From positions 186,001-250,000 of the IMG/VR virus record IMGVR_UViG_3300047472_000309: a stretch of 64,000 bases of DNA; one strand, written 5' to 3'. Shown here piece after piece: positions 1,448-55,521 of this stretch. The notes beneath the pieces were generated by a model that saw only the letters and a list, made by a program, of their open reading frames with translations, had not been told where the DNA came from and searched no databases. A program made the position numbers and the translations under genes. The stretch's first letter is position 1, and each line of letters begins with the position of its first letter.

Positions 1448-1510
1448 TTTTATCTGGAATCCTTGATCTGGGTCCTCATTCCACCATAGACAGATCATGG
1501 CGAGCACGAG

Positions 1511-1545
1511 TAAAAACGGCATAGACCCAGGGCCGTAGCCCTGGG
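1511..1545 (-). terminator. Intrinsic terminator hairpin followed by TATGCCG and a T-run
   Basis: Minus strand CCCAGGGC-TACG-GCCCTGGG TC TATGCCG TTTTT. Confidence 0.75.
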
Positions 1546-1551
1546 CATCGA

Positions 1552-2052
1552 TTAGGTCGGGTTCGACCAGACGATCTTGGCAATGGCCGCTGGATCGCTC
1601 AGCATCATCACCTGCACTTCGAGCTGGGCCTTTTGGGCGATGCACTTGCTAATCCAGTTAAAGCCATCGATGCCGACTTGCTGGATTTGCGCAGCGTTGT
1701 GACCGCGCATTGCCCAGTTGCTGTAGCGGTCCGCACACCAGAAGAGCACCGAGGTGAACCCCGGCAACATCGAGCGCTGCACCGCTGCATTCAGGTTCGC
1801 CTGATCCGTGCTTTTGGCCGGATAGTGGTAGACTGCCCCCAGCGCACTGGAATTGAAGCCACCGACAATAGCGGCTGCACAAGCGTCGTCGATTTGCTGG
1901 ATTTGCAGGTTCTGGATTTCCCCCAACGGCGTGGGGATGTCCGCCAGCGCTTCCGCATCACTGATCACCGTAGCACCGGCAGGCAGATCATGCGCGAACG
2001 CAATCGAATTGAAAAACAGAATATTGCCGCTCGCGTCGCGGTAGTAAGGCAT
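1552..2052 (-). CDS. DUF4376-like tail fibre assembly/chaperone protein
   Basis: QIDDACAAAIVGGFNSSALGAVYHYPAKSTDQANL and FWCAD...H..AQIQQVG pattern; follows fibre genes. Confidence 0.65.
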   Translation of the reverse strand: MPYYRDASGNILFFNSIAFAHDLPAGATVISDAEALADIPTPLGEIQNLQIQQIDDACAAAIVGGFNSSALGAVYHYPAKSTDQANLNAAVQRSMLPGFTSVLFWCADRYSNWAMRGHNAAQIQQVGIDGFNWISKCIAQKAQLEVQVMMLSDPAAIAKIVWSNPT

Positions 2053-2072
2053 CGGAAAACCTCAAAATAAAA

Positions 2073-2762
2073 TTAGGACCACGCAAGGCTCGCGCTTTGG
2101 TCAGGAGTACCGTTAGAGACAGGAATCGAAGAGCCCGCAGCGGTAGCCGACACTCGATAGACGTCAACACGCACCACTCGTCCAATCGTATTCGTGGTGA
2201 CATTGCCCGAGGCATCCGTCACGATCTTACCAATGTACATATTGGTGTTGGATTCGGCCAGCACGGTAGACGAAGCGATGATGCTGACCACTCCGGCTGT
2301 CAGCTTCAGGTAGTAAAGCGTCGTGGCATTGGTCGCATAGCCGAGACTGTAAGCACCGAGCGTAAATGCTTGGCCCGCAATCAGACACGGAATGCCCGCC
2401 GCGAAATTCAGGGTCTTATTCGACGTATTGAGGGTAGCTGGAATCGCAGTACCCATCGCATCGCCAAAAGCAGACAGCGGAACAATACCGGAGGGCAAGA
2501 GCGACGCGACGGCCGTGTCAATCTGGCCCGAGCTATACGCACCAATCTGGTTGGCGGTCGTGCCGTGTGGGTTGTTGGTGTTATTGGCGTGCGCGTCCGT
2601 ATGGGCGTTCGCCGTGTTGGTCAACTGGGTGGCGGTCTGGCCATTGAGGGCCAGTGCGTTATCGGCCGAGAAGGCAGTTTGCACCTTGCGGCTAATCCCA
2701 CCTACTACCGCCTCGCTAAAGGTATTCAGCGCGCCGTTCAATCCGCTCAGGTCCATGATCAC
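2073..2762 (-). CDS. Virion structural/tail fibre protein; short paralogue of 2852..6145 (start may be ATG 2756)
   Basis: HANNTNNPHGTTANQIG fibre motif; C-terminus RVDVYRVSATAAGSSIPVSNGTP matches RLGNYRVSATRAGGAIPVSGGTP of the 1097-aa protein. Confidence 0.7.
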   Translation of the reverse strand: MIMDLSGLNGALNTFSEAVVGGISRKVQTAFSADNALALNGQTATQLTNTANAHTDAHANNTNNPHGTTANQIGAYSSGQIDTAVASLLPSGIVPLSAFGDAMGTAIPATLNTSNKTLNFAAGIPCLIAGQAFTLGAYSLGYATNATTLYYLKLTAGVVSIIASSTVLAESNTNMYIGKIVTDASGNVTTNTIGRVVRVDVYRVSATAAGSSIPVSNGTPDQSASLAWS

Positions 2763-2805
2763 ATCCGTGTAAAGAGATCTTCTATAAGATTGCCGATTAA
2801 AACGA

Positions 2806-2840
2806 CAGCATAAAAACCAGGATACCGAAGTACCCTGGTT
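2806..2840 (-). terminator. Terminator hairpin (UUCG loop) followed by TTTTTATGCTG
   Basis: Minus strand AACCAGGGTAC-TTCG-GTATCCTGGTT-TTTATGCTG. Confidence 0.8.
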
Positions 2841-2851
2841 CTCATGAACGT

Positions 2852-5800
2852 TTACTTCCAGGTGAGCACTGCCGTTGCATCAGGCGTACCGCCCGAGACC
2901 GGAATCGCCCCACCTGCGCGTGTTGCCGAAACCCGGTAATTCCCCAAACGCGTGACCTTTTGCATGTTGATCGCACTGATCTGCGTCGCATTGGTGACCA
3001 GCGTACCAATGAAAAGCACAGTCGGTGACTCCGGCTGATCAGTGGTGCGAATCACGTATGCCGGGGTCCCATTGGTGAACACCGCGTAGATGTAGAAAGT
3101 CGTGCTCGCCGGGTTGGCTTGGATAGTGGTCAGATCAATCGTGGCCGGTTGCAGCTTGTAATACACGCCATTCATGATCAAAGGCTGAATGTCCGTAAAG
3201 TAGACAATCCAGCCTTGGGCCACATCCTGCGACACCTGTACGGACCAATTGGCTTGCGCGGACTGGCTCCAGGCATCGTAAGTCGAGAGGTTGGTCGCAA
3301 AGGGTCGGAACGTGAGCTTAGTTAAGTCATCGGAATTCGTCACCAGTTGTTGGAATTCCCCGAAGCCCTTGCCAGGTACCCCACCCCAAAAGGTCGAGGC
3401 GATTTGCCCCCACACCGGATTGGTCACCAAACGATTCCAGTCCGGGCGGTTCGTACTCTTGGGCACCGCAAAGCGATACGTGTAGATGCCCGTGAAGATC
3501 ACCCGATTCAGGAAGTGTTTGGATGTCCCGCCGATGAGCCAGCAGTCCGAACACTCAACGATGGTCACCCCGCCACCCATGTAGGTGTACTTGTAGCTAC
3601 TTTGGTTATCCGTGAAGGCGCCCGCAAAGCTGTAATTCTGCTTCGCTGGGGACACCGATACCAACGACAAGCCCGTAATGGCCCCGGCGCGAGACCCCGC
3701 CGTAATGGAGAGTTCTCCCAGTGCCGCCATGTCTTTCGCCACGGCGTCGGTCGAAATCCAATTCAACACGGCAAACGGCGGAATCGAAGCGTTCTGCGGC
3801 ACCACGATGGTTACGCGCGAATCCACTGCGCCCACTCCCAATGCAGCGAGCATCGCGGACTTAATCGACCCATACAGCGCAGGCGCGATTGAGGTACTGC
3901 CCGTGAGCGTCAGGTTGCTATCACAGTTCGTGTAACCTGTATTGGAAATGTTCTCCATATACGAAGCACCCGTACAGGTGATCGCCCCTGCGGCGGTGAT
4001 TTCACTGATCATGCCCGCATACGTGACGGGATTCTTCCCGAGGTCCGTTAAGAACTGCCGGTAGGCGTTCGGGGCAAAACCCGTGAGCGTGCCGAAGTTC
4101 TGCGAACTGTAGGTATAGCCGTCCGCGCCCTTTTGAGCCAGGATCAGATCGGTCTGGAAACTTCCCGCGGCGTTCTTGCCACCCCCGTACACCATCACCC
4201 GGTTATTGGGAAGCTGAAACGAACCCATCAAGCCTCCGCCTACGGCCGACCCATACGCGGGTGTGAACACGGTGTTAAGCTTACCCGTGACTGTCAAACC
4301 ACCCGCCAGGGCGAGCACCGGCGCAATCGCGCCCGCGTTCAGCTTACACCGAGTGACCCAACAATTCAAATCCGGCTGGTTCTGATCCACCACCGACACC
4401 CAGTAACCCGATGGGTGATAGGAAAGCGTTTCACCCGTGAGCCAGTTACCTGAGGAAATCGAGCTGCGGTCTGTCAACAGAATAGGTCCCGAGAGAGCGA
4501 CCTTATTGCTACCGTCTAGCGCCACGGTTAGCGGACCCTTATAGTTGGACTCGACACCGCCGGTGCGATTCGTCGGATTCCACACAAAGGTGTAGAACAT
4601 ATTGACCACAGGTTGCTCGCCAGTAGCCGGATTTTGCACCAGGAACTCCACCATGATGCGGGTGCGGACATTGCCATCTGAGCCTTGTGCACTATACGTG
4701 CAGTGACCCAATTGGTTGGGATAGAACGGCACGATGTAGCAGCCGCTCGCACTCGGATCGCGCACCACCAGCGGTTGATTGGCCGCCACATCCACGCAGG
4801 CGTTGGCAAAGCGCATGTTGGTGGTGGAGATATTCTGCCCGTAGAAGCTATTGATCGTCCAGCCTGTCAACGCAGTGGGAACGACCGTATTGCCGTTGCC
4901 GATGGAGGACAAGGGGATCTGGTAGATCTGGTATTCCACTGGCAGACCGGTATTGTCCGCCAAGTCCGCATTAGGGAACATCAGGAACACCGAATCATTA
5001 CCGACGAACGCTTCCGGGTAGGCGTTATTAATCACGCCCGGCAAATTACTTGCCGAAATCACGCAGCCCGTGTGATTGGCGTCGTTAAAGGTGCCGTGGG
5101 TGAGCGAGAGGAACCAGTCCGTGAGATTGTTGCTGGCATCTTGCAGGCGACCCAAAATACAGGCGCCATTGATGTCACTGCGACACACGTAGCGTGCGCT
5201 GGAACCCGACGGGAAATACGCCGGAGCATACTTGCGATTGGTGCGGGTGGGCGTGAGATCTGTAGCCGCCAACACGTTTTTCGTATAGGCGTAGTAAACC
5301 CCTTGCTTCGAGCCATTGGTGCCACTGCGCAAGAACACAAAGGTGCCATCGTCTTCCACAATACCCGGATAGTTACGGGCTTCTCCGTAGAGGGCGATGT
5401 TGGTGGTGGCGCCCTCAAACGAACCCGAGACCCCGGCCGGAAGATAACTAAGCTCCCCGTAGCGCGTGAGCGGCATGCCACTAAAGGCTACCCGACCCTG
5501 CAACTGACTATCGACCTGGGTCTTCGAATAGGTGCCCGCCTGAAGTGGTGTGACGTTGTGCGATTGACCAGATGTCGCTGCGTGCGCATCCAGATCGGCT
5601 TCCAAGGCTGTGATCACTTCAGCCGGGGTTGCGTCACTCAGTTCAGCCGCATTGTCGGCCGTGACCGCTTCTTGCACCTTGGTATTCACCAGCGCTGAGT
5701 TATACGGCGCCACAAAGTCCGTCATGGCGGTCTGCAGACTTTGTAGGGAGGACGTGAGTGGGCTCGTACTCGGTGTTGCTTTCAGTGCTCGATGCGGTGC

Positions 5801-12711: not shown

Positions 12712-12951
12712 CTACCTCTTTGCTCCGATGTTAATCGGCTTGCCCGTGATCTTGGTGACACCTTCAAGGACCAGGTAGGCGATGATCACGACATTGACCA
12801 CCGGCAAACACGTGACGACAGTCAGCCATTCTGCGCGCCCGAATTTGCGACGATGTCCCACGTAGTGCAACACCATCATCATGGCCAGCAAACAACTGCC
12901 CATCGCGTAGCAGCCCAAGGCACTCGCCGTCATCTTCACCCACCAGCTCAT
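12712..12951 (-). CDS. Small membrane protein
   Basis: Two hydrophobic segments. Confidence 0.65.
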   Translation of the reverse strand: MSWWVKMTASALGCYAMGSCLLAMMMVLHYVGHRRKFGRAEWLTVVTCLPVVNVVIIAYLVLEGVTKITGKPINIGAKR

Positions 12952-13722: not shown

Positions 13723-14223
13723 TTACCCCACACGAACTGCTCGGGTCCGTAAATGCTCCCGAGCCTTCATGGTTAGGACACCACACAAGTTGGCACCTTT
13801 CCACTCATAGGGATTTCCAATCCGGGGGTCGTCTTCATTCAGACCCACCCCGTAGAGGGTATCACGTTCGCTGGCTTCAACCAGGATGTCGTCGCCCGTA
13901 TCCAGCAGCCATTGGCGCTCCTGCGGGTTCTGACTGTACTTCTCAATCATGCCAATGAGAATAAACTGCTCTCGCTTGGCCACCCATTCTGCATCGACGT
14001 AACCGCGCACCTTGCGACCTAAGACTTTCTGCGCTTGCGGGTTATCGGTCTTCAAAATGAGCTCCGCTACATCTCGATCCTTAAAGAGCATCGCCTTGCA
14101 GTACATCATGAACTGCTCGAGCGACGAGAACGAAATGCCCTTTACTTTGAAATGACAGAGGTAGTGGTTGGACATGAAATCACGACGAGTGTAGAACGCC
14201 GTAACATTCCCCCATCGCCGCAT
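13723..14223 (-). CDS. NADAR (YbiA/RibX-like) ADP-ribosyl/N-glycosidase
   Basis: FSSLEQFMMYCKAMLF, KVLGRKVRGY, KYSQN, LLDTG...LVEAS..D.LYGVG, GANLCG..TM..R. Confidence 0.9.
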   Translation of the reverse strand: MRRWGNVTAFYTRRDFMSNHYLCHFKVKGISFSSLEQFMMYCKAMLFKDRDVAELILKTDNPQAQKVLGRKVRGYVDAEWVAKREQFILIGMIEKYSQNPQERQWLLDTGDDILVEASERDTLYGVGLNEDDPRIGNPYEWKGANLCGVLTMKAREHLRTRAVRVG

Positions 14224-14589: not shown

Positions 14590-14790
14590 TTAGGATAGTT
14601 TTGTTGCGAGGCGAATAGCCCCGACGATCGCCAATGAAAAACCAATGGGTCCAAAGATGACCCACATCGTGACGGAAAACCAGTCCTTGAACTGGATGTT
14701 GTCGTGGATGCCGCCTGCTGTGCCGACCAAGAGCGCAATGGCAATCAGCACTAACCACACGACCGCAGCCCACCCCAACCATTGTTTCAT
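14590..14790 (-). CDS. Small two-TM membrane protein
   Basis: GAGG RBS before MKQWLGW; two hydrophobic helices. Confidence 0.65.
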   Translation of the reverse strand: MKQWLGWAAVVWLVLIAIALLVGTAGGIHDNIQFKDWFSVTMWVIFGPIGFSLAIVGAIRLATKLS

Positions 14791-14807: not shown

Positions 14808-14872
14808 ACAAAAAAAAAGAGGGATCGAAATCCCTCAACCCACTACCCCAGCCGAAGCCGGAAGTAGTGGGT
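14808..14872 (-). terminator. Tandem hairpins ending in a strong U-tract terminator after the adhesin gene
   Basis: ACCCACTAC/GTAGTGGGT stem, then GAGGGAT-TTCG-ATCCCTC-TTTTTTTTT. Confidence 0.85.
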
Positions 14873-14882: not shown

Positions 14883-17210
14883 TTAGAACTGGAAGCCAGC
14901 CGAACCCACTGCTGCCACGTCGCCGCGGCTGCTGGTGGACACGCCTGCCTTGATGACCCAGTGGTTGTCACCGGTCACCGTCGAGACGCCGATTGCCAGG
15001 CCTTGTTGGCCATGGTAGTTCGACACCGCAGCGGAAACCATCGACTTGCCTGCTTGCGTCGGTTGCGGCAGACCAGCAATCGCCAGCACCGAAGCGAGGC
15101 CACCGTAGGTGTCCTTCTTGTAGCTGTCGAACTGGTTCTGCAGGTTCGCCACCGCACGATCGGTGTAAGCGTACGACTGTTGCTGCGCGTAGTTCACTTG
15201 ACCCACGTTCGCTGCGTCAGTCGGCGCCGTACCCGCCGCCACGTTGGTGATCTGACGTTCGTTACCGGCGGAACCCACCGACACCGAGTTGTCGCGATCC
15301 GCCACCGAGTTCGCACCCAGCGCCACCGAGTTGTTCGACTGCACCTTCGCGGTTGCGCCGACTTGGCCCTTGTTCACATCAGCTTGGAGCTGGGTGATGG
15401 ACTGGGTGTTCCCGGTGATCTGGGTTTGCAGTCCGGCTTCTGCCGTCGTAGCGCGCGTCGTTTCGTTGTCGATCTTCGTGTTCAGACCTGCTTCCGCAGT
15501 CTTGGCACGATTCGATTCCGAATCGATGTTGGTTTGCAGTTGGCCTTCAGCCGCTTGGGCACGGGTCGATTCTGCACCGACTTGTTTGTCGGTGTAGGAC
15601 TTCGCCGAGTTCAGCGTCTTGCTGGCCGTCGCGTTGGTGTACGCAGCGGACGTTGCGACCGCGCCGGTGTAAGCGGCAGCGGCCACGGCATTAGCGTGCG
15701 AGTTTGCCGACGACAGCGTAGCCGCGCTCGACGCATCCGTGTAGGCTTCCGACGTAGCAACACCCTTCGCGACTTGCGTGTCGGTGTAACCCTTGGCCGA
15801 CTTAAGCGTAGCAGCATCGCCCGCTTGTTGCGCCGTTTGCAGGTCGTGCGCGACGTTGTTGGTGTAGTCGAACGACGTGTCGATCGCCGTTTGCGTGGCG
15901 GTTGCAACTTCAGCGTGGGTCGCGCTGTTCGCTTGCAGGTCCGAGATCGCCGAGCTGTTTTGCTTGGACTGATTCAGCGCCGTGTTCGCGGTCGACTGGG
16001 CGTGCTGTGCGTCGCCTTCGGCCTTACCTGCCAGACCGAGTGCTGCACCTCCGACTACCAGGGCGGCATCTGCCGTACCTTGTGCATGCGAAGCGGCTTT
16101 ACCCGCTGCGTCTGCCGTCGCTTGCGCCTTGTTCACGCCGGTTTGCAGACCTGCTTCTGCGGTGGTGGCGCGGGTGGTTTCCGTGCTGATCGCCGTTGCA
16201 TTGGCGTCCGCTTTGGCGTTGGCCGTGTTAGCCGTGGACTGAGCAGCAGCTGCTGCTTTGCCCGCTGCTTTGGCGTCCTGATCCGCATTCACAGCCAGTG
16301 CACCGGCTGCGACACCCACACCCAGCGCCAGGTCAGCAGTGCCTTGGGCGTTCGCAGCAGCCTTACCGGCTGCTGCTGCAGCGGAACCCGCTGCCGTGGC
16401 TTTGGCATCTGCCGTAGCAGCGGCTTGACCAGCGGCAGTCGCAGTCGATTGTGCAACGGCTGCTGCACCTGCCGCGCCTTCTGCGACAGCTTCAGCGTGA
16501 CCTGCCGTGATCGCAGCGCCCGTTGCCGTGATGGCTGCGCCTGCTGCAACGCCTTCAGCTGTCTGAGCGGTTGCTGCAGCACCCTGGGCGATCGACTTCG
16601 CTTGCGCCGAGGTGTCGACTGCGGCTTGCGAGTTGGCGAGCGCTTGATTGGCCGTACCCTGAGCGGCATTCACGCCGTTCTGGAGACCAGCTTCGGCTGC
16701 CGTGGCGCGGCTCGTTTCACCTGCCGTTGCGGCAGCCGCAGTCGACGCGTTGGTGTTGACTTGCTTTTGCAGTCCGGCTTCTGCGCCTTGTGCGCGAGCT
16801 GCTTCAGCGGCGACTTGCGTCGTCGTGTAAGCGTTCGCACCGTTCACGGCATTGTTGAGGTCTTGATGCGTGGCGCTGTTCACCTGCAGTGCGGCGATCG
16901 CGCCGCCTTGCTGACTGACTTGACCTTGCAGTTGCGTGATGTTCGTCGTGTTCGCCGCGACGTTCGTGTTGGTCGAGTTCAGTTGGGCGCTGGTAGCCAG
17001 ACCCGTGACCGTACCGGTGACTGTGCTGCCATTGGAGAGCGAAGTGCTCACCGTGGTGCCGTTGATGTTCACGCCGGTAACCGAAGCGCCGTCAGCACCG
17101 TTCTTACCACAGCTGACGAACAGACCACAGTCCGATGCGTGAGCACCGATCGATGCCGAAGCGAGCAAAGCGATGAGGAGGGCATTCTTTTTAAGGACGT
17201 TCTTTTTCAT
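14883..17210 (-). CDS. Trimeric autotransporter adhesin (YadA/Hia-like, type Vc)
   Basis: Sec signal MKKNVLKK...GAHA; Ala-rich coiled stalk with E..RA..AEAGLQ and YTD repeats; NSVALGANS head, [18 protein letters not shown] neck; YadA anchor ending GFQF. Confidence 0.92.
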
Positions 17211-17272
17211 GATGCGCTATTTTCCATAAAGGTAAGTGGTAACGAAGTTGGGTTTGTTTCCAACTCACCTTT

Positions 17273-17287
17273 GTTATATAGGTCTGA
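17273..17287 (-). promoter_or_regulatory. Phage early-promoter-like motif TCAGACCTATATAAC
   Basis: 14/15 match to the copies at 1433 and 48758; 63 nt upstream of the adhesin start. Confidence 0.75.
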
Positions 17288-17289
17288 GA

Positions 17290-17577
17290 TTATCTTGGAT
17301 CGTCCTTGCTCAGCGGCGATCTGGGAAGCGTATGAAGCACGCGCGTATTGCCCCGGACGCGTAGATTCACAATGCTCCGATACTGTCGGTAGCAGTCTGC
17401 CCAATGCCTAATCGCTTTGCGGTCCCACCAGCGCTCCTTACCTTCTACCACTACGGGTAGGGGAAAGGGCACGGGTGCCTTCTCTGGTCGCCTCAAATAG
17501 AGCTCGATCTTCTCCCGGCTCTTCTTGGTAAAACGACACACGTCCCCGATGGTCATCAACCTGACCGGTGTGCTCAC
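17290..17577 (-). CDS. AlpA/excisionase-like HTH DNA-binding protein
   Basis: LMTIGDVCRFTKKSR...FPLPV...RWW...I..W pattern. Confidence 0.7.
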   Translation of the reverse strand: MSTPVRLMTIGDVCRFTKKSREKIELYLRRPEKAPVPFPLPVVVEGKERWWDRKAIRHWADCYRQYRSIVNLRVRGNTRVLHTLPRSPLSKDDPR

Positions 17578-17586: not shown

Positions 17587-18030
17587 CTACTGATTAAACA
17601 CGTACTCCAGCTTACCTGGTCGGTACATGCCCTTTTCGACTTTGCTCAGGTCGAAATCGAAAAGGTTGATAAACGGTCGGGAGAACTGGTGAAACATCTC
17701 TTCCGCCACGGTACAGCTGGGCTTGTCGTTGCCCAATTGAACGAGCATCTTTTCAACGAGATGAATTCCGGTTCCCCGCTTCTGATATTCCGGCAACACC
17801 CGCACACAGCGCAGCTTGGTCTCATGCGCGTTACGCTTACCTAATGCCACGCCAATGACTTGCTGCTTATCCTTGGCGAGCATCAGGATGTCTTTGCCGA
17901 CCATGACGCCAGGCATAACTTTGTTGGTGAACCAGTAGCTAAAGTCCGGGTAGAGCGTATCCATCCCGTGCAAGAGCTTACCGGCTTCCAGCGTATCGAC
18001 CAGACGGGTCCCTTGCTCGTAACGGATCAT
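17587..18030 (-). CDS. GNAT family N-acetyltransferase
   Basis: KLRCVRVLPEYQKRGTG acetyl-CoA motif A. Confidence 0.85.
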   Translation of the reverse strand: MIRYEQGTRLVDTLEAGKLLHGMDTLYPDFSYWFTNKVMPGVMVGKDILMLAKDKQQVIGVALGKRNAHETKLRCVRVLPEYQKRGTGIHLVEKMLVQLGNDKPSCTVAEEMFHQFSRPFINLFDFDLSKVEKGMYRPGKLEYVFNQ

Positions 18031-21645: not shown

Positions 21646-21831
21646 TTAATGCCGCGCTTCTTTGTCCGCGTGTTCTTGCGCGTTCACGGCGATCAGCAGC
21701 TGTTGCGCAGCGTTAAACGACGCCCAGACCTTCTGAAGCCCCTCGTTGATGTAGTTCTTCCAGTCCCCACGCTCCATCGTTCTGTCCCACTGTGGGCTGG
21801 TGTAGTCCTTCGGTACCGCTACTGCCGTCAT
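21646..21831 (-). CDS. Hypothetical protein
   Basis: 61 aa; GGAG RBS; overlapped by the 3' extension of 21713..22426. Confidence 0.6.
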   Translation of the reverse strand: MTAVAVPKDYTSPQWDRTMERGDWKNYINEGLQKVWASFNAAQQLLIAVNAQEHADKEARH

Positions 21832-22426
21832 GCTTGTTCTCCCACGGGGGTGTCACCCAAACGTCTTCGCTGTAAAGTTCGGGCGGAGTAAATTGTTTAT
21901 CGAGCAGCTGATTCGCTGCCGCGGCGATCAGCGCTGCTTCTTTCCGGTCGACGTAACGTCCCCAATTCGTGAGAAAGCCCTGGTCTCGGTGATACACGTG
22001 CGGGACCTTCATCATGTCCATGGCCCAGAGGACATGATGATGGCGTCCAGGCGCTTCGACTGCCCAGATCTGACCCGTACCGTAGTGCAGCACCGCGGAG
22101 CCCACAATGCGCTCTTCGTCGTACGGGTCCGCGCGATGTTCCTTGAACTCGTCCGGACTACCAATCAAACATTCCAGACCAGGAGACGCCCCGTCGTGAT
22201 CTGGAACCTTGACAGCACGGGGCGGTTCGGGTAGAACGAACCACCGCTTGAGCTTCTCATCGGAGAGAAGACTGAGCAGCGCCATGCCAGCCAAGAAAGT
22301 GAGGAGGTGGCTCGGGTGCGACACCCGCGCACTGACCAACATCCACACGGTTACAATTACTACTGCTACACGAAACCACACAAAGAAGCCAAACATCTTG
22401 TTATCCCCGAGAAGATGCTTATTCAA
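21713..22426 (-). CDS. Membrane-anchored hypothetical protein with a GRHH...QGFLT..GRYVDRKEA...LYSED domain
   Basis: Two N-terminal TM segments plus a recurrent phage domain. Confidence 0.65.
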   Translation of the reverse strand: MNKHLLGDNKMFGFFVWFRVAVVIVTVWMLVSARVSHPSHLLTFLAGMALLSLLSDEKLKRWFVLPEPPRAVKVPDHDGASPGLECLIGSPDEFKEHRADPYDEERIVGSAVLHYGTGQIWAVEAPGRHHHVLWAMDMMKVPHVYHRDQGFLTNWGRYVDRKEAALIAAAANQLLDKQFTPPELYSEDVWVTPPWENKHDGSSGTEGLHQPTVGQNDGAWGLEELHQRGASEGLGVV

Positions 22427-23877: not shown

Positions 23878-23947
23878 TGCCCCTCCTGGTTTGAAGAAAG
23901 TTTCACCTCATAGCTACCGCAGCAACGAGCCGAGACCCGTCATGCTA

Positions 23948-24040
23948 AAACGAAAGAAGTGACCCGCACCGTCGACCACTTCCCACCCTACTACACCGAT
24001 CGCAGTGAGGCCCGCGAGGACCATCACTGCGCTTATGCCG
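23948..24040 (-). terminator. Two hairpins after the tail-tube-like pair
   Basis: GCAGTGA/TCACTGC stem and GAAGTG/CACTTC stem plus TTTCGTTTT; TATGCCG on the plus strand at 24034. Confidence 0.6.
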
Positions 24041-24047
24041 CCGAGCT

Positions 24048-24956
24048 TTAGCATTCGGCCACAGTGTACGGATTGGCGCTATGCACGCTGATGCCGTTGA
24101 GCAGCGTCTGGGCTTCTGCCAGCACTATGGGATTACGCACGTACGTGCCGTCCAGCATCGCAGAGACGTATTGTTTACCGAACGGGTAGCCTTCGGTGTC
24201 GCGCACCGATTCCAGACCCGTATAGTGCACCGGGCGCAGGTTCGTGCCCTTCCAGGCAGCGAGCACCCTGGTGTGGGTCGCATCCGTTTCGAAGAACACT
24301 ACGTCGATCGTCACGTCCTGCAGCGAGATCTTCGCCTTGTACGAACGGTTATCGCGCGCCTGTTCTTCGTCGAGCAGATAGTCGTTGTAGCGATCGCCCC
24401 AGTGATGCATGGTGGTGTCGATCACCCGATTCTGACGCTCCTGCCAGGTGAACTGGGCTTGCGAAGCAGTGGGCATCACGCGCGTTTGCGTCTTCGAGAG
24501 TTCGCCGACCTTGAAGCCCGTACGCAGGCCCTTGATCTTGATCGGATGCAATTCGACGAGAGCCTTGAGCGACTCATTGAAGCCCGGCTCGAAGAGCGTT
24601 TCACGCGCGCCGCGCACCAGGACAGCAATAATGTTGCGACCTTGGTAGGCGTTGTCGGCGATATGGCCGACGTCAGTGCGACGGGGTTGGGTTTCCGGTT
24701 GCTTCTCGGTATCTGCATTGCCCGCAGTGACCGGACCTTCATTGCCGATAGCCGGTACGCCGCCCATGATGCCGTCTTCCGGTGGCGACGGATTGTCGAT
24801 GCTCTCTGCGAGTTTAGCAGCGCCTCCCAGACGCGCTTCGACGTCCCGACCATTACCTGCCCCAGCGAGCAGCGACGAGACCTCCAGATGGTCTTGATTG
24901 CCGTCCTGATACTGCTTGTGGCCGTTGCTGTGTTTCTTACGTGATCCTGCCGACAT
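24048..24956 (-). CDS. Divergent paralogue of the phiKZ-type tail tube protein, with a ~100-aa disordered N-terminal extension
   Basis: TAAGGAG RBS; SLKALVELHPIKIKGL, VFFETDATHTRVLAAWKGTNLRP, AQTLLNGISVHSANPY. Family match is recalled, not searched. Confidence 0.6.
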   Translation of the reverse strand: MSAGSRKKHSNGHKQYQDGNQDHLEVSSLLAGAGNGRDVEARLGGAAKLAESIDNPSPPEDGIMGGVPAIGNEGPVTAGNADTEKQPETQPRRTDVGHIADNAYQGRNIIAVLVRGARETLFEPGFNESLKALVELHPIKIKGLRTGFKVGELSKTQTRVMPTASQAQFTWQERQNRVIDTTMHHWGDRYNDYLLDEEQARDNRSYKAKISLQDVTIDVVFFETDATHTRVLAAWKGTNLRPVHYTGLESVRDTEGYPFGKQYVSAMLDGTYVRNPIVLAEAQTLLNGISVHSANPYTVAEC

Positions 24957-26745: not shown

Positions 26746-27834
26746 TTACACCGCCATCGGAGCAGTGAGTGCCGGATGCGGATCGTAGCCTTCCAGCATG
26801 AACCAGGTCGGATCGATCTCAGCCAGTGCCCTGATGGCCTTGCCCGTGACGGTCTCGCGCACATTGCGCTCATCGTAGCCTTCGAGCCCTGCCTGGAACA
26901 TCCGCTCAGCCTGACGTGCCAACGAATTGAACGACGGCATCTGTGGGTTGATGGCCAGTGTCGGCAACGCACGCGGTTCACGCGAGAGCTGCTCTTCCAC
27001 CTGGTCGAGGTGGTTCACGTAGATGTGCGCGTCATTGAACGTGAGATTGACCCACTTCGGTTTGAAGCCTGTCAGGCGCGCGACGATATGCAACAGCAGC
27101 GAAGCCGAGGCGATGTTAAACGGCACGCCCAAGAAGAAGTCCGCCGAGCGCTGCGTCATCGACAGCGACAGCTCACCCTTGGCGATGTTCGGCAAGAACT
27201 GATACAACAGGTGACACGGCGGCAATGCCATCGCATCCAACTGGGCCGGGTTCCAGGCGTGGAACAGGATGCGTCGATTGGTCGGCTCCAGAATCAGCTT
27301 CTGGATGCAATCGCCGAGCATGTCGATTTCCTTGAAGAACAGGCGTCGATTGAAGACCGAAAGATTACCACTCTTGATCACGGTTTCATCATGCTGGCTG
27401 GTGAACTTACCCATATCTTGCCAGCCGTCCCACTTGAGTCGCTCAGCAATCGCGACATCCCGCGGGTCCTTCAGATCGAGGACACGAAAGCCCGGCCATT
27501 CACGCCACATCGCGCCGTACACGTCACCGAGATCGTCTTCACCGCGACGATTCGGGTTCGCCAACCAGGCCTTGTTTTCGTTAGCGTTCTGATCCCACAC
27601 CTTGCAGCCGAGATCCCGGAAGGTTGCCGCACTACGTGCCGAACGCAAGAAACCGACCAGCTCACCGATGGCGGCTTTGAACGCCAGCTTCTTGGTCGTC
27701 ACCGCGGGGAATCCTTCTTGCAAGTCGAACCGCATGAACACTGTCGGGAACATGATCGTGTCGATCCCGGTGCGGTTTTCCTGACGCGTACCATTATCGC
27801 GGATGAAGGCCAGGGATTCGTTGTATTGCTTCAT
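26746..27834 (-). CDS. thyA: Thymidylate synthase
   Basis: RTG..T, FPAVTTKKL, MALPPCH catalytic Cys, QRSADFFLGVPFN, DAHIY.NH. Confidence 0.97.
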   Translation of the reverse strand: MKQYNESLAFIRDNGTRQENRTGIDTIMFPTVFMRFDLQEGFPAVTTKKLAFKAAIGELVGFLRSARSAATFRDLGCKVWDQNANENKAWLANPNRRGEDDLGDVYGAMWREWPGFRVLDLKDPRDVAIAERLKWDGWQDMGKFTSQHDETVIKSGNLSVFNRRLFFKEIDMLGDCIQKLILEPTNRRILFHAWNPAQLDAMALPPCHLLYQFLPNIAKGELSLSMTQRSADFFLGVPFNIASASLLLHIVARLTGFKPKWVNLTFNDAHIYVNHLDQVEEQLSREPRALPTLAINPQMPSFNSLARQAERMFQAGLEGYDERNVRETVTGKAIRALAEIDPTWFMLEGYDPHPALTAPMAV

Positions 27835-37324: not shown

Positions 37325-39205
37325 TTACAGCGTCGGCTCGTCAGCACCGATGAGATCCCCCGAGATATTCAGGTTCCCATTGATCACCACCGGCGTATCC
37401 GCCGCCACGACAATCACCACCTTCGCGTCGATCAGAGCCTGGACCCGCTCGTCGAGCTTGAGCAGGCGCGCTGCCATGTCTTCGGTCACGTAGTAGCGCA
37501 TCGAGTGATCAGCCAGGTCGTCGCCGGTGAGCGCCAGCACCATCTGCAGCACCTTGACCGTGAGGCGAGCCCGCGCGTCTTCGATGTTGGTGACATTGCT
37601 GACCGCTTCAAGCGTCACATGCGGCGCCGACACCATCGGCAGTTCGTCATCCGGCTGCGGCACGTTCACGCGCAAGCCTGCCGGAATCGGGCCACTGCCG
37701 AGCAGATGCAGGTTCATGCGGCGCAGCTGCGCGACTGTGGTATGGAACTCGATCGCCAGTTCGGTGATCTTGTCGCCTTCCTTCGCTTCGATGTAATACT
37801 GGTGCGTGACCGGATCGAAGATAGTCGGGCGGACTTGCGAAGGCTGCACGGTCGAGTCCACCCCGGCCAATGCTTCGAGCACAATGCGCGACCAGTTCTC
37901 GAACTTGAGTCCGCTCGCGAGCAGTTCCTTGATCGTGCCGCGCGGGCCGTCCTTCAGTTCTTCTTCTGCCACCCGTGCCTTGAGCGACTTGGGCACGACG
38001 ATCAGGTTCACTAGACCCAGGTGCACCTTGCCGACGTTATCGCTGTCGTCACGGATGAAACCGAGGTGTTCGAAGCGAAACAGCGACGGCGTATTGAGCG
38101 GGGTTGCTTGGAGACCGTCGGCGTCGACGAAGATGAGCTCTTCGCCTGCGACTTCGCGTTGCAGATTGGTGTTGATGGTCGCTTCGGTGTCGAGCACTGA
38201 CTGGTCGTTCACTTTGACGTCCAGATAATCGACGTGTCCGCCGTAGCCCACCGAGAACTTGCCACCGAGGCGCTCTTCGCCGACCTTCTTGGTGCGCTGA
38301 TACGAGGAGACTTCGTCGGTTTCCCAGTTGATCGGTAGCCCTTGACGGAAGGCTTCGTCGTCCTGAAACACGACCGGCGAATACGGCAGCAACTGACGGT
38401 AGAACGGATTGGCTTCCAGACCATCGCGCTGACGGATGACGGTCTCCGCACCGACGATGGAGAGCCACGTCTTGTATTCCTCAGCGCTTAAGCGCGTGAG
38501 GCCGTGCGTGAGTCCCATGCCGGGCAGATTGTCCGTGAAGTCCTTGTCGATGGCAAGGATGTGACCGGGGTGTTTATATGTCTTCATCGTGGTTCCTTTG
38601 TTTTTGTGAATCGATCGATGGGAAAGCATCTGGGCGAGAAATTCACTCGTCCAGCGCTCTTGCGGGGAAAGCAAACGCTTAGCCTGTTCCGCCTGCTGCC
38701 GCTCCTGCACCACCTGGGCGGGCTCATACGTGACGAAACTGTACTTGATACCGTGGATGCCTGAAGTGTGATCTTCACGCTGAGTCTCAGTCCACTGGGT
38801 CGGACGAATGGCCGGAAAGAAGGCATCACCCTCAAACTCTCGATCAATCTCGGTGATGAGGAGTTTGTCGGCCTTGGGTAAAGCTTGTTCGTAGAGGGTC
38901 GCACCGCCAATGAGAAACATCTCTTCCTCACCACGGTACTTACAGTATTCGATCGCGGCTTCCAGCGAGCCTGCGGTCAGACACCCTCTAAACTGCGCGG
39001 TCGCTTTGGTGGTCACGATAATGTTCTCGCGACCCGGCAAAGCGAAGCCGATGGACTCGTGCGTCTTGCGCCCCATGATGACGGGTTTGCCCGTCGTGAT
39101 GCGCTTAAAGTACGCCAAGTCCTCCGGCAGATGCCAGGGAAGTTGGTTGTTCAAACCAATCACACTGTTGCGGTCTCGCGCAGCGATGATGACAAGCTTA
39201 GTCAT
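37325..39205 (-). CDS. folA: Dihydrofolate reductase fused to a Nudix-like hydrolase and a LysM domain
   Basis: IG.NNQLPWHLPEDLAYFKRIT.GKPVIMGRKT, LPGRENI, IGGA, EGDAFFP; Nudix-like GGHVD...REVAGEEL...HLG; LysM KEGDKITELAIEFHTTVAQLRRMN...GLRVNVP. Confidence 0.88.
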   Translation of the reverse strand: MTKLVIIAARDRNSVIGLNNQLPWHLPEDLAYFKRITTGKPVIMGRKTHESIGFALPGRENIIVTTKATAQFRGCLTAGSLEAAIEYCKYRGEEEMFLIGGATLYEQALPKADKLLITEIDREFEGDAFFPAIRPTQWTETQREDHTSGIHGIKYSFVTYEPAQVVQERQQAEQAKRLLSPQERWTSEFLAQMLSHRSIHKNKGTTMKTYKHPGHILAIDKDFTDNLPGMGLTHGLTRLSAEEYKTWLSIVGAETVIRQRDGLEANPFYRQLLPYSPVVFQDDEAFRQGLPINWETDEVSSYQRTKKVGEERLGGKFSVGYGGHVDYLDVKVNDQSVLDTEATINTNLQREVAGEELIFVDADGLQATPLNTPSLFRFEHLGFIRDDSDNVGKVHLGLVNLIVVPKSLKARVAEEELKDGPRGTIKELLASGLKFENWSRIVLEALAGVDSTVQPSQVRPTIFDPVTHQYYIEAKEGDKITELAIEFHTTVAQLRRMNLHLLGSGPIPAGLRVNVPQPDDELPMVSAPHVTLEAVSNVTNIEDARARLTVKVLQMVLALTGDDLADHSMRYYVTEDMAARLLKLDERVQALIDAKVVIVVAADTPVVINGNLNISGDLIGADEPTL

Positions 39206-48687: not shown

Positions 48688-48757
48688 GGTAACTCCTCAT
48701 TGATCAACTCATGGAAAGAATAAGGAAAGCGATTTAACTTCCCTAATTGCTAGGTTT

Positions 48758-48772
48758 GTTATATAGGGCTGA
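48758..48772 (-). promoter_or_regulatory. Phage early-promoter-like motif TCAGCCCTATATAAC
   Basis: Identical to 1433-1447; lies at the structural/accessory boundary. Confidence 0.8.
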
Positions 48773-48788
48773 AAATTAATTGAATCTG

Positions 48789-48824
48789 CGGCATAGAGGC
48801 GGAGTGTGAGCTCCGCCTCGTATG
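48789..48824. terminator. Hairpin flanked by outward-facing TATG on both strands
   Basis: CGGCATA-GAGGCGGAG-TGTGAG-CTCCGCCTC-G-TATG. Confidence 0.75.
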
Positions 48825-48873
48825 ACCTTTAGGTCTACTCACTCATTTAGTCGGAACAGTTTACAGGATGCTT

Positions 48874-49941: not shown

Positions 49942-49944
49942 CTG

Positions 49945-51039: not shown

Positions 51040-51077
51040 AATGAGGAGAGGTCATAAAATGCCCGTGTACGAATTGA

Positions 51078-51110
51078 CGGCATAAAAAAGCGGAGCCGAA
51101 GCCCCGCTTT
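51078..51110 (-). terminator. Terminator (UUCG loop) followed by TTTTTTATGCCG
   Basis: AAAGCGGGGC-TTCG-GCTCCGCTTT. Confidence 0.85.
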
Positions 51111-51128
51111 TCCTCAGCACTGAAATGC

Positions 51129-51677
51129 TTAGCTGGCGGCGTCGAAACCCGAGAGATCCGTCGTCGCAACAGCCGTGGACAGCGCAACCTGCGGCGCTTG
51201 CCAGGTCATGGCGATTGCTTGCAGCGAACCGTCCACGTACAGCAACGAACCCGCATTGGCCACCAGATCGAGCGTGGCCTGATTGCCGCTCTGCGCACCC
51301 GAAAGCGCCACGCCGGGATCGGCCGGATCTTCAAGATGCACTTCCGAGGCCACGAGGCCGAGCTGGGCGGCCAGTGCCGTGACGATGTCAGCGGCTGTGG
51401 TGCCGGTGGTCGCGGTATAGCTATCGACCGGGCTGAGCACCGAGTCGTTCAGACCCCGGCGCGTGTAGTTGACCGAGACCGAACCCGTGTAGCCCTGACC
51501 ACCAACGGCCGTCAGTGCCACTGTGGTATTACGGCCGTCGCCCGTATCGGACTTGACGCTGGGTGCACCTGCAGTCACTTGCGTGTTCGTGATCGTTTGG
51601 CCGGTGTTAGCAGCATTGACGAGCGCGAGCAGGTTGTCCAACGCCGACAACGATGCGTTGATTTTTGCCATTTCCAT
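51129..51677 (-). CDS. Family-A module-only virion protein
   Basis: LLALVNAAN...GRNTTV.LT...YTGSVSVNYTR; ends TDLSGFD. Confidence 0.75.
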   Translation of the reverse strand: MEMAKINASLSALDNLLALVNAANTGQTITNTQVTAGAPSVKSDTGDGRNTTVALTAVGGQGYTGSVSVNYTRRGLNDSVLSPVDSYTATTGTTAADIVTALAAQLGLVASEVHLEDPADPGVALSGAQSGNQATLDLVANAGSLLYVDGSLQAIAMTWQAPQVALSTAVATTDLSGFDAAS

Positions 51678-53307: not shown

Positions 53308-53317
53308 TCACTCCTCC

Positions 53318-55507: not shown

Positions 55508-55521
55508 CTCTCGTGCCGTTA

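What the first reader, a model, noticed from the sequence alone, without database searches (positions are those of the whole stretch)
14883..17287. A lytic jumbo phage carries a complete trimeric autotransporter adhesin as its own early transcription unit
Seen: Sec signal peptide, long stalk, head/neck and intact outer-membrane anchor ending in Phe, with a dedicated phage early-type promoter and a double-hairpin terminator. It has no virion attachment module. The head is membrane-proximal and the distal end is a fibre-like [13 protein letters not shown]...LSNG module. Established: TAAs are exported by Sec/BAM and cause autoaggregation; phage-borne examples (Eib) are from prophages. Inference: the phage makes the infected cell sticky so that new hosts are tethered before lysis, or masks the surface against superinfection or predators.
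Basis: partly seen in the sequence, partly recalled or inferred. Interest (0 to 1): 0.85.

Follow-up and report, generated by a model that had tools for sequence, protein, structure and literature searches.

The report
Jumbo phage encodes an outer-membrane adhesin fibre
A clade of giant Burkholderia phages carries a complete bacterial-type surface fibre gene with its own phage promoter and terminator, so the virus probably re-coats the living infected cell; such genes were known from dormant prophages, not from this kind of phage.

Summary
Window 14883-17210 (-) is an intact 775-aa trimeric autotransporter. It has a Sec-type signal peptide, a roughly 540-residue Ala-rich stalk, short YadA-head repeats plus neck, and a YadA anchor ending in Phe. 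Upstream lies a phage-specific promoter-like motif and downstream a double-hairpin terminator.

The window comes from a 310,654-bp IMG/VR contig related to Burkholderia phage FLC9. FLC9 has a homologue of the SPN3US virion RNA polymerase, so it is phiKZ-related.

The gene is not a stray capture. Nine FLC9-like genomes keep an intact orthologue, with dN/dS of 0.17-0.33 at dS of 0.5-1.3. All nine keep the promoter motif and a terminator. The motif matches published phiKZ-type early promoters.

The distal tip is a Cys-loop, a collagen-like triple helix of 0-13 triplets, and a small beta module. I found this tip only in phage contigs, never in 185,579 cellular genomes. Other large phages carry complete autotransporters too: BCSR5 and viral contigs of 217 and 524 kb.

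Export to the host outer membrane is inferred. Function is untested; I favour adhesion, with superinfection exclusion a close rival. Early timing and the lytic lifestyle are inferred by analogy.

The parts
17273..17301 (-). Phage-specific promoter-like motif: GATCCAAGATAATCTCAGAC followed by CTATATAAC. This is the TTTCARMC-TATATWAC class, which resembles phiKZ-type early promoters.
   Evidence: Conserved upstream of the TAA in all nine genomes. The window holds 4 copies, all on the coding strand. FLC9 holds about 18, all on the minus strand. It matches the motifs in PMC7058600 Table 2.
17246..17265 (-). Short 5' leader hairpin just downstream of the promoter motif (stem AGTTGG/CCAACT).
   Evidence: Stem seen. 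A consensus fold of 7 orthologues gives 5 pairs, one with a compensatory change, and only -2.4 kcal/mol. The evidence is weak.
14883..17210 (-). Complete trimeric autotransporter gene, 775 aa plus stop.
   Evidence: Orthologues are shown. dN/dS is 0.17-0.33.
17136..17210 (-). Sec-type signal peptide, residues 1-25, with predicted cleavage after AHA.
   Evidence: Read directly from the translation. The n/h/c layout and the small-x-small site are kept in nine orthologues. There is no ESPR extension.
16971..17135 (-). Distal tip, residues 26-80: a Cys-X7-Cys loop, three collagen-like G-X-Y triplets, and a conserved beta-type module (SVTGVNI...LSNG...GLAT).
   Evidence: Alignments. A profile search of 1.8 billion representative proteins found the module in only a handful, notably two phage-context mini-TAAs. 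It was found in no cellular genome. In IMG/VR it occurs only in TAA genes.
15366..16970 (-). Stalk, residues 81-615. It is 26% Ala overall and carries YxD and ETxRAxxAExxLQ repeats. Length differs between orthologues through block insertions and deletions.
   Evidence: alignment; composition; the repeat is shared with Vibrio phage tail-fibre genes at 52-57% identity over about 63 aa.
15186..15365 (-). Membrane-proximal YadA-head repeats (2-3) and neck, residues 616-675.
   Evidence: Aligns to SadA 2yo0, BpaC 7o23, YadA head 1p9h and 3s6l. NCBIfam BimA and YadA partial matches. Pfam YadA_stalk matches the L009 orthologue at E 1.9e-10.
14886..15185 (-). Last coiled-coil segment and YadA-type membrane anchor. 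The Pfam match covers residues 715-775 (14886-15068). The C-terminal residue is Phe.
   Evidence: E 6e-15. (Hia 3emo/2gr7, AtaA 9vnj, YadA 2lme). About 59% identity to Burkholderia ambifaria TAAs.
14810..14872 (-). Double-hairpin intrinsic terminator: a 15-pair hairpin, then GAGGGAT/ATCCCTC, then T9.
   Evidence: -35.4 kcal/mol, z -5.3. A hairpin plus T-run follows the gene in all nine genomes.

Best explanation
This is a functional type Vc (trimeric autotransporter) surface fibre. An FLC9-like, phiKZ-related jumbo phage of Burkholderia maintains it as its own promoter-gene-terminator cassette.

Proposed sequence of events:
1. Soon after DNA entry, the gene is transcribed from a phage-specific promoter of the class that resembles phiKZ-type early promoters.
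2. The precursor crosses the inner membrane through the host Sec system.
3. Three C-terminal four-strand segments form one 12-strand barrel in the host outer membrane with the help of BAM.
4. The roughly 690-residue passengers are threaded out and zip into a long fibre, tens of nanometres by helical rise.
5. The fibre tip is a disulfide loop, a short collagen-like triple helix and a small beta module.

The still-living infected cell is thereby re-coated by the virus.

I commit to adhesion as the selected effect. The tip binds neighbouring host cells or a substrate, so the infected cell stays embedded among susceptible cells. The large, slowly diffusing progeny are then released next to new hosts.

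What is shown: gene integrity, domain set, conservation, purifying selection, the cassette structure, and the phage lineage.

What is inferred: early timing, export and surface display, and above all the adhesive function.
For: Molecular identity:
- YadA anchor, Pfam E 6e-15.
- Neck, head and anchor align to solved SadA, Hia, BpaC, YadA and AtaA structures.
- A signal peptide and a terminal aromatic residue are kept in nine orthologues.

Maintained by selection:
- Nine FLC9-like genomes of 159-322 kb all have intact orthologues.
- Whole-gene dN/dS is 0.17-0.33 at dS of 0.5-1.3.
- On the anchor tree the nine form one clade with 99% support, which points to one old acquisition.
- GC3 is 0.664 against a phage mean of 0.687, so codon usage is already phage-like.
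- The gene is kept even where the flanking genes have been reshuffled.

Own transcription unit:
- The promoter motif and terminator are conserved in all nine.
- The motif class is rare and strand-specific: 4 copies in the window and about 18 in FLC9.
- It matches published early-promoter motifs of phiKZ-like phages.
- FLC9 gp40 is a full-length homologue of the SPN3US virion RNAP subunit, 600 bits.
- A different motif, hairpin plus TATGCCG, precedes the structural genes.

Pointers to a ligand-binding tip:
- The tip is the fastest-evolving part, with dN/dS up to 0.65 and 0-13 collagen triplets.
- The whole protein diverges faster than its neighbours in close relatives, 80-89% against 90-99% identity.
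- Stalk length is tuned by block insertions and deletions.
- From established knowledge, every characterised TAA is an adhesin (Linke et al. 2006, cited in PMC9146016).

Independent recurrence:
- BCSR5 carries a separate 1261-aa TAA related to a B. ambifaria chromosomal TAA.
- Viral contigs of 217 and 524 kb, and two phage-like fragments, carry related TAAs.
- One of these sits behind a perfect TTGACA-17-TATAAT promoter.
Against: - There are no expression, localisation or binding data of any kind.
- 'Early' rests on motif analogy. The core here is TATATAAC rather than TATATTAC, and the timing of this promoter class in FLC9-like phages has never been measured.
- The fibre lacks a large head domain, so an adhesive site is not evident.
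- Nothing in the sequence separates adhesion from steric or receptor-level exclusion of other phages.
- FLC9 itself has lost the collagen repeat and has a diverged tip, so the conserved tip module is not indispensable.
- The lytic lifestyle was not tested by an integrase search.
Confidence: 0.45

Rival explanations
1. Superinfection exclusion or surface shielding. The early-made fibre coat blocks adsorption of other phages, or of the phage's own progeny, to the infected cell and its debris. It would act sterically or by binding and occluding a long surface receptor such as flagella, pili or capsule.
For: - Early-class promoter.
- Early-expressed envelope proteins are the classic exclusion devices (T5 Llp, T4 Imm/Sp; established knowledge).
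- A 2026 preprint on huge-phage outer-membrane proteins argues the same. It cites lambda Lom blocking LamB (10.64898/2026.10.24.761521).
- The long latent period of jumbo phages makes exclusion valuable (inference).
- Fast tip evolution would also fit an arms race with competitor phages.
Against: - A tip tens of nanometres from the membrane cannot mask outer-membrane receptors directly.
- No characterised TAA is known to act this way.
- The receptor of FLC9-like phages is unknown.
- Nothing was tested here.
Confidence: 0.3
2. Protective spacer. The fibre layer keeps neighbouring cells or predators at a distance. The infected cell then survives contact-dependent killing (T6SS, CDI) or grazing until the long jumbo-phage cycle is complete.
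For: - The fibre is long and mostly stalk, with only a minimal tip.
- It has an early-class promoter.
- Burkholderia are rich in contact-dependent weapons (established knowledge).
- This is inference only.
Against: - There is no precedent.
- Fast evolution of the tip is not explained by a passive spacer.
- TAAs usually promote contact rather than prevent it.
Confidence: 0.08
3. Virion component. The protein is a tail or head fibre that merely reuses TAA-like domains, as the 'YadA domain-containing structural proteins' of lytic phages do.
For: - The stalk repeat is shared with Vibrio phage tail-fibre genes and with PHROG families annotated as tail or adhesin.
- YadA-domain virion proteins exist in phiEco32, My1, Syn19 and P-HM1 (PMC9146016).
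- The collagen-like repeat and the following module loosely resemble collagen-rich fibre-like proteins.
Against: - A cleavable Sec signal peptide and a complete membrane anchor with a terminal aromatic are conserved under purifying selection in all nine orthologues.
- The promoter is not the class found before the structural genes.
- The gene lies in a long block of small non-structural ORFs.
- There is no paralogue among the phage's own genes.
Confidence: 0.04
4. Neutral passenger. The gene is a host gene recently captured by the phage, or an assembly chimera, with no role in infection.
For: - The C-terminal 160 residues are about 59% identical to Burkholderia ambifaria TAAs.
- The region has higher GC than the rest of the window.
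Against: - The gene is present in the complete genome of the isolate FLC9 and in eight metagenomic relatives, at a syntenic site in five of them.
- dN/dS is well below 1 at near-saturated dS.
- GC3 is phage-like, and the high GC comes from 26% Ala.
- It has a dedicated phage promoter.
- The passenger has no cellular homologue.
Confidence: 0.03

Closest known systems
Chromosomal YadA-like TAAs of Burkholderiaceae (B. ambifaria YadA-like proteins P0003-P0007; BpaC; SadA- and Hia-type anchors)
   Same: - Sec signal peptide, head repeats, neck, coiled coil and a 4-strand YadA anchor ending in an aromatic residue.
- About 59% identity over the last 160 residues or so.
- These proteins are the nearest cellular neighbours of the phage clade on the anchor tree.
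   Different: - The passenger is unrelated. It has no large head, no ESPR extension, an Ala-rich stalk and a Cys-loop, collagen-like and beta-module tip not found in cellular genomes.
- It is encoded by a jumbo phage behind a phage promoter.
Eib immunoglobulin-binding TAAs of E. coli prophages
   Same: They are trimeric autotransporters carried on phage genomes and displayed on the host surface (EibG: PMC4352079; otherwise my own knowledge).
   Different: - Eib genes sit in temperate prophages and act as lysogenic-conversion genes.
- Here the carrier is a phiKZ-related jumbo phage with no sign of lysogeny, and the gene has an early-type phage promoter.
- The passengers are unrelated. No Eib match appeared in any search.
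'YadA domain-containing structural proteins' of lytic phages (phiEco32, My1, Syn19, P-HM1)
   Same: They are TAA-like passenger domains encoded by virulent phages (PMC9146016).
   Different: They are described as virion structural proteins. Here a signal peptide and a complete anchor are conserved, which points to the host outer membrane rather than the virion. I did not inspect those phage proteins for signal peptides or anchors myself.
Phage-encoded beta-barrel outer-membrane proteins (lambda Lom; 1,603 OMPs of huge phages, preprint 10.64898/2026.10.24.761521)
   Same: They are phage proteins inserted into the host outer membrane during infection, with a proposed role in remodelling the receptor landscape.
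   Different: Those are barrels of 6-22 strands with no long passenger. The preprint's text contains neither 'autotransporter' nor 'YadA'.
TAA of Burkholderia jumbo phage BCSR5 (MW460245, annotated as hypothetical)
   Same: It is a complete TAA with a signal peptide and an anchor ending in Phe, followed by hairpins, in a Burkholderia jumbo phage.
   Different: It is a separate acquisition. At 1261 aa it has 4 head-repeat and 10 neck matches. It is 37% identical end to end with a B. ambifaria chromosomal TAA and only 40% identical to the window protein over the anchor.
phiKZ-type early promoters (phiKZ TATATTAC; extended motifs of 201phi2-1, OBP and N1M2)
   Same: All share an AT-rich stretch, then TTTCAR.., then a TATATWAC core, then GTG about 4-5 nt downstream. 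They occur in small numbers per genome and upstream of hypothetical genes.
   Different: The commonest core in the window is TATATAAC. No transcription start site or time course has been mapped in FLC9-like phages.

Membership tests
Trimeric autotransporter adhesin (type Vc secretion) | C-terminal YadA-type membrane anchor (four beta strands per chain) | tested here: met
   Pfam PF03895 at residues 715-775, E 6e-15, 55.5 bits against a cut-off of 22.7. The region aligns to the Hia, YadA and AtaA anchor structures.
Trimeric autotransporter adhesin (type Vc secretion) | N-terminal Sec signal peptide | tested here: met
   Read from the sequence: basic n-region, 14-residue hydrophobic core, and AHA before the cleavage site. 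The layout is kept in nine orthologues. No signal-peptide predictor was available.
Trimeric autotransporter adhesin (type Vc secretion) | C-terminal aromatic residue (BAM recognition signal) | tested here: met
   The protein ends in ...GFQF. All nine orthologues end in QF.
Trimeric autotransporter adhesin (type Vc secretion) | Neck and coiled-coil stalk joined to the anchor | tested here: met
   Residues 563-678 align to SadA 2yo0 and BpaC 7o23, including the neck sequence. Pfam YadA_stalk matches the L009 orthologue at E 1.9e-10 but found nothing in the window protein itself.
Trimeric autotransporter adhesin (type Vc secretion) | Adhesive head domain at the distal end | tested here: not met
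   Only 2-3 YadA-head repeats are present and they lie next to the membrane. The distal end is a Cys-loop, collagen-like and beta-module tip instead. A large head is common in TAAs but not universal.
Trimeric autotransporter adhesin (type Vc secretion) | Trimer formation, surface display and adhesive activity | not testable with these tools
   This needs outer-membrane fractionation, heat-stability gels, immunofluorescence and binding assays.
phiKZ-type early transcription unit (virion-RNAP dependent) | AT-rich promoter with a TATATTAC-like core upstream of the gene | tested here: met
   The motif at 17273-17301 is conserved in nine genomes. It matches the published motifs.
phiKZ-type early transcription unit (virion-RNAP dependent) | The phage encodes a multisubunit virion RNA polymerase | tested here: met
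   FLC9 gp40 against the SPN3US 'RNA polymerase beta subunit': 29% identity over the full length, 600 bits, with the same gene order beside a giant fibre gene. This was tested in FLC9, not in the window's own contig.
phiKZ-type early transcription unit (virion-RNAP dependent) | Transcript appears in the first minutes of infection from a start about 10 nt after the motif | not testable with these tools
   No transcriptome of FLC9 or its relatives was found.
Eib-type prophage TAA (lysogenic conversion) | Carried by an integrated temperate prophage | tested here: not met
   Two pattern scans of 185,579 species-representative cellular genomes found no copy of the gene or its tip. The carrier is phiKZ-related. 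No integrase search was done.
YadA-domain virion structural protein | A virion component, expected not to need a signal peptide or membrane anchor | tested here: not met
   Both a signal peptide and an anchor are present and conserved. Virion proteomics is not available.

The most novel reading that the evidence does not exclude
A whole clade of virulent, phiKZ-related jumbo phages uses the host's own type V secretion and BAM machinery early in infection. It displays a phage-evolved fibre whose collagen-like tip acts like a receptor-binding protein mounted on the cell instead of on the virion. The doomed cell then captures susceptible neighbours, or holds its place in a biofilm or on a plant surface. 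This offsets the poor diffusion of giant virions. It would be a viral manipulation of bacterial social behaviour. Large phages appear to have arrived at it more than once (FLC9-like clade, BCSR5, contigs of 217 and 524 kb).
Probability: 0.3. Interest if true: 0.85.

Novelty: new variant of a known kind. Interest (0 to 1): 0.68.

Why it matters
Phage-borne surface adhesins have been treated as lysogenic-conversion cargo of prophages. Here a phiKZ-related jumbo phage lineage has kept a complete outer-membrane fibre under purifying selection through long divergence. It has given the gene an early-type phage promoter and a passenger of its own.

If the protein is displayed, virulent phages actively re-engineer the surface of the cell they are about to kill. 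That bears on:
- how giant, slowly diffusing virions find hosts;
- superinfection and competition between phages;
- aggregation and biofilm behaviour of infected populations;
- the use of FLC9-type phages for biocontrol of rice seedling rot.

The finding also extends the recent picture of envelope-directed genes in huge phages to type V secretion, which that survey does not mention.

The question is directly testable, because FLC9 and its host are in culture.

Tried and rejected
- **Pfam and NCBIfam on the window protein.** At relaxed thresholds Pfam found only the anchor. Head and neck had to be shown through solved-structure matches and NCBIfam partial hits.
- **Tip-module profile search.** It returned two giant repeat proteins, P0071 and P0072, as top hits. 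Their Pfam matches had no individually significant stretch, which is low-complexity noise, so I discarded them.
- **Anchor alignments.** A 14-sequence anchor alignment was too diverse for a collection scan. A 7-sequence version worked.
- **Cellular genomes.** Both scans of cellular genomes found nothing. They are pattern-limited, so they may miss diverged copies.
- **5' leader hairpin.** The consensus fold gave only weak support: 5 pairs and one compensatory change. I do not build on it.
- **Relatedness to Rak2/PBECO4-like phages.** I considered this, where a 1097-aa protein hit that group. That would have made the promoter a T4-type late promoter. I rejected it for three reasons. The structural paralogues match SPN3US and Erwinia chimalliviruses. 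FLC9 has the virion RNAP homologue. A separate TATGCCG motif precedes the structural genes.
- **A TATG-type site inside the TAA leader.** One occurs in the window, but it is not conserved in relatives.
- **Literature.** A search for 'YadA' with 'jumbo phage' returned only author names such as Yadav.
- **Integrase search of the FLC9 genome.** Not done.
Full report
**What is at the coordinates.** The window holds one long intact ORF at 14883..17210 on the minus strand, 775 aa with an ATG start. Pfam places a YadA-like membrane anchor at residues 715-775 (E 6e-15, 55.5 bits, cut-off 22.7). NCBIfam gives partial matches to BimA and YadA models over the last 160-290 residues.

Against the sequences of solved structures, the C-terminal third matches well:
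- SadA fragments (2yo0, 2yo3);
- the Hia translocator (3emo, 2gr7, 2gr8);
- BpaC (7o23);
- the YadA head (1p9h);
- the YadA and AtaA anchors (2lme, 9vnj).

The neck sequence lines up with the SadA neck almost residue for residue.

The N-terminus reads as a classical Sec signal peptide. It has four Lys in the first eight residues, a 14-residue hydrophobic core, and A-H-A before the cleavage site. The protein ends in Phe.

The 816-aa ORF on the opposite strand is an antisense shadow of a gene that is 26% alanine.

**Whose genome this is.** The window is part of IMG/VR contig IMGVR_UViG_3300047472_000309, 310,654 bp. Its only close relative among 50,697 deposited phage records is Burkholderia phage FLC9 (LC667451). 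FLC9 is a 321,833-bp isolate from leaf-litter compost that infects B. glumae.

The window is clearly phage. It carries thymidylate synthase, a DHFR fusion, and a 15-kb array of paralogous virion structural genes. Those paralogues have their relatives in SPN3US and the Erwinia chimalliviruses.

FLC9 gp40 and gp41 sit beside a 2239-aa gene, the same order as the SPN3US virion RNA polymerase genes beside its tail fibre. gp40 aligns end to end with the larger SPN3US subunit at 29% identity and 600 bits. A published genomic classification also groups FLC9 with Chimalliviridae (PMC12388082).

The phage is therefore phiKZ-related. I did not test whether it builds a nucleus.

An earlier lead pointed elsewhere. 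A 1097-aa protein resembled proteins of Rak2/PBECO4-type phages. I set that lead aside for the reasons above.

**The gene is a conserved feature of a phage clade.** FLC9 gp240, annotated 'hypothetical protein', is a full-length orthologue. Seven further IMG/VR contigs of 159-315 kb carry one as well.

All nine orthologues are intact and share the same layout:
- signal peptide;
- two cysteines 4-11 residues apart;
- a collagen-like G-X-Y run;
- a 35-residue module (SVTGVNI..G.TV.T.LSNG..V.G.V.GLAT);
- an Ala-rich stalk with block insertions and deletions (total length 577-775 aa);
- two or three head repeats;
- neck;
- anchor ending in QF.

The window protein keeps only three collagen triplets. 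Most relatives have 7-13, and FLC9 has none.

Pairwise dN/dS for the whole gene is 0.17-0.33 at dS of 0.5-1.3. The signal peptide plus tip segment reaches 0.65. The neck and anchor are the most constrained parts.

On a tree of the last 165 residues, the nine form one clade with 99% support. That clade lies inside a well-supported group (98%) that also holds B. ambifaria chromosomal TAAs. This fits one old acquisition of a Burkholderiaceae-type translocator.

Third-position GC is 0.664, against 0.687 +/- 0.044 for other genes in the window. The GC bump in the composition profile therefore comes from amino-acid content, not from recent import.

Gene order around the TAA is colinear in five of the genomes. 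In the more distant ones it is reshuffled, yet the cassette persists. In the closest relatives the TAA is less conserved than its neighbours, 80-89% against 90-99% identity.

**The transcription unit.** Upstream of the start codon, all nine genomes share a motif. It is an AT-rich stretch, then TTTCAG(A/C)CC, then TATATAAC (TATATTCT in two of them), then GTGAG about five bases on. The motif is kept even where the upstream gene is different.

The motif is rare and strictly on the coding strand:
- four copies in the 64-kb window, at 1441, 17281, 45415 and 48766;
- about 18 in the whole FLC9 genome, all on the minus strand and mostly within the 123-234 kb block of small ORFs where the TAA lies.

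It closely resembles the early-promoter motifs tabulated for phiKZ, 201phi2-1, OBP, EL and N1M2 (PMC7058600 Table 2). For 201phi2-1, an AT-rich motif about 10 bp upstream of mapped start sites was assigned to the early class by comparison with other jumbo phages, and it precedes hypothetical genes (PMC11512511).

A second, commoner intergenic signal is a terminator hairpin followed by TATGCCG. It precedes many genes, including structural ones. The TAA has only the first kind.

Downstream of the stop codon, two hairpins and a T9 run fold to -35.4 kcal/mol (z = -5.3). Every orthologue has an equivalent hairpin and T-run.

'Own promoter and terminator' is therefore shown at the sequence level. 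'Early' is an inference by analogy, because no transcript data exist for this phage group.

**The passenger appears to be a phage invention.** A search of 5.8 billion proteins found cellular relatives only for the last 6-28% of the protein. The best were Burkholderia, Caballeronia and Paraburkholderia TAAs at about 59% identity.

A profile of the tip module, scored against 1.8 billion representative proteins, gave 11 hits. Two are low-complexity giants, discarded. The meaningful ones are:
- two mini-TAAs of 349 and 431 aa with the same Cys-loop, collagen and module layout;
- a few collagen-rich fibre-like proteins in which a similar module follows each collagen run.

Both mini-TAAs sit in runs of small same-strand ORFs typical of phage early regions. 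One lies on a 41-kb IMG/VR contig. The other lies behind a perfect TTGACA-17-TATAAT promoter and before a terminator.

Scans of 185,579 species-representative cellular genomes found neither the whole protein nor the tip. These scans are pattern-limited.

In IMG/VR the tip occurs only in these TAA genes, including one on a 524-kb contig. Related anchors also occur on a 217-kb viral contig, where the TAA has a neck followed by long collagen repeats.

Neither FLC9 nor the window contains a paralogue of the passenger. It is therefore not borrowed from the phage's own tail fibres.

Separately, the unrelated Burkholderia jumbo phage BCSR5 carries a 1261-aa TAA with a signal peptide, four head-repeat matches, ten neck matches and an anchor. 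It is 37% identical end to end to a B. ambifaria chromosomal TAA, so it is an independent capture.

**How it most likely works.** The following steps rest on established knowledge of type Vc secretion. The precursor is exported by Sec. The three anchors form one 12-strand barrel with the help of BAM. The passengers emerge and fold into a trimeric fibre.

With about 540 stalk residues, the fibre should be tens of nanometres long. This is my estimate from helical rise, not a computed figure.

The signal peptide, the anchor and the terminal aromatic are conserved. That makes a virion role very unlikely and an outer-membrane destination very likely.

What the fibre does for the phage cannot be read from the sequence. 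Several features are what one expects of a ligand-binding tip held beyond the surface layers:
- the tip evolves fastest;
- collagen length and stalk length vary;
- the protein diverges faster than its neighbours.

All characterised TAAs are adhesins. I therefore favour adhesion or aggregation of the infected cell. I rate superinfection exclusion almost as likely, because early-made envelope proteins are the classical exclusion devices. The same idea was recently put forward for beta-barrel proteins of huge phages (preprint 10.64898/2026.10.24.761521). A protective spacer role is a weaker third option.

**Comparison with what is known.** The protein passes the sequence-testable criteria for a TAA, except that it lacks a distal head.

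It differs from three known groups:
- **Eib proteins.** These belong to temperate prophages (PMC4352079; otherwise my own knowledge).
- **'YadA domain-containing structural proteins' of lytic phages.** These are described as virion parts (PMC9146016).
- **Beta-barrel proteins just reported from huge phages.** The text of that preprint mentions neither autotransporters nor YadA.

I found no paper in the searchable library that describes a complete TAA in a virulent or jumbo phage. Both FLC9 gp240 and the BCSR5 protein are deposited as hypothetical.

I class the finding as a new variant of a known kind. The secretion module is known. The new elements are the phage-specific passenger, the early-type phage promoter, and the carrier being a phiKZ-related jumbo phage clade.

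**Limits.**
- There are no expression, localisation or binding data.
- The timing of the promoter class is inferred.
- The lytic lifestyle is inferred from lineage and from the absence of copies in cellular genomes. No integrase screen was done.
- The virion RNAP homologue was shown in FLC9, not in the window's own contig.
- The collection scans use short peptide patterns and can miss diverged copies.

Noticed in passing
window 1517, 6184, 11366, 23163, 48228, 48789, 51078 (minus strand); also L014 (FLC9 1-50000): A second recurrent intergenic signal: a G+C-rich terminator hairpin followed at once by (C/T)TATGCCG(T/C). Eight of the 11 window matches are on the coding strand and most are intergenic. 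It is frequent before structural genes in FLC9. It looks like the middle/late promoter class of this phage group. At 1387-1551 and 48724-48873 it sits in tandem with the TATATAAC motif.
   Followed up: partly
window 48874-63921 (minus strand): An array of at least eleven paralogous virion-structural genes (phrog_1037, 3545, 13163 and 2448 types). Their relatives are in SPN3US and the Erwinia chimalliviruses. FLC9 has the same array at 234-257 kb.
   Followed up: partly
window 14590-14790 (minus strand): A 66-aa protein with two predicted membrane spans lies directly after the TAA terminator and has its own GAGG ribosome site. It is conserved only in FLC9 (gp239, 74% identity), not in the other seven genomes. 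It is therefore not an obligate partner of the TAA.
   Followed up: partly
window 13723-14223 and 17587-18030 (minus strand): The genes flanking the TAA include a NADAR-domain protein (Pfam E 2e-40) and a GNAT-type acetyltransferase (weak match, E about 4e-5). Both are syntenic in FLC9.
   Followed up: no
window 37325-39205 and 26746-27834 (minus strand): A 626-aa protein has dihydrofolate reductase at its N-terminus fused to a domain of unknown function (phrog_8902). A thymidylate synthase lies nearby.
   Followed up: no
L003-L006 versus window, +/-10 kb around the TAA: In the closest relatives the TAA is clearly less conserved (80-89% identity, with block insertions and deletions) than nearly all its neighbours (90-99%). 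This suggests accelerated change or recombination confined to this gene.
   Followed up: partly
L011 1660-1780 and 3077-3200; L011 4796-5674: A 42-kb phage-like contig carries a 431-aa collagen-tipped mini-TAA between a perfect TTGACA-17-TATAAT promoter and a hairpin terminator. About 1.7 kb downstream lies a gene with an AcrVA2-like (anti-CRISPR) Pfam hit.
   Followed up: partly
L031 (IMGVR_UViG_3300037418_001546, 523,836 bp) 1780-3279; L024 (IMGVR_UViG_3300046543_000266, 217,605 bp) 1456-3294: Two further very large viral contigs encode complete TAAs. One is 499 aa with a Cys-X6-Cys loop and the same tip module. The other is 585 aa with an N-terminal neck followed by long collagen-like repeats. 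Neither has the TATATAAC motif upstream.
   Followed up: partly
L002 (Burkholderia phage BCSR5) 2572-6357: The BCSR5 'hypothetical protein' QRE00188 is a 1261-aa complete TAA. It is homologous along its whole length to a B. ambifaria chromosomal TAA, including the unusual N-terminal FVDRGNP...C...C segment.
   Followed up: partly
window 17136-17210 versus all other minus-strand ORFs: A simple scan for basic-then-hydrophobic N-termini found the TAA to be the only protein in the 64-kb window with a classical cleavable signal peptide. The other hits were small membrane-span proteins (21713-22396, 23914-24054, 12712-12939).
   Followed up: partly
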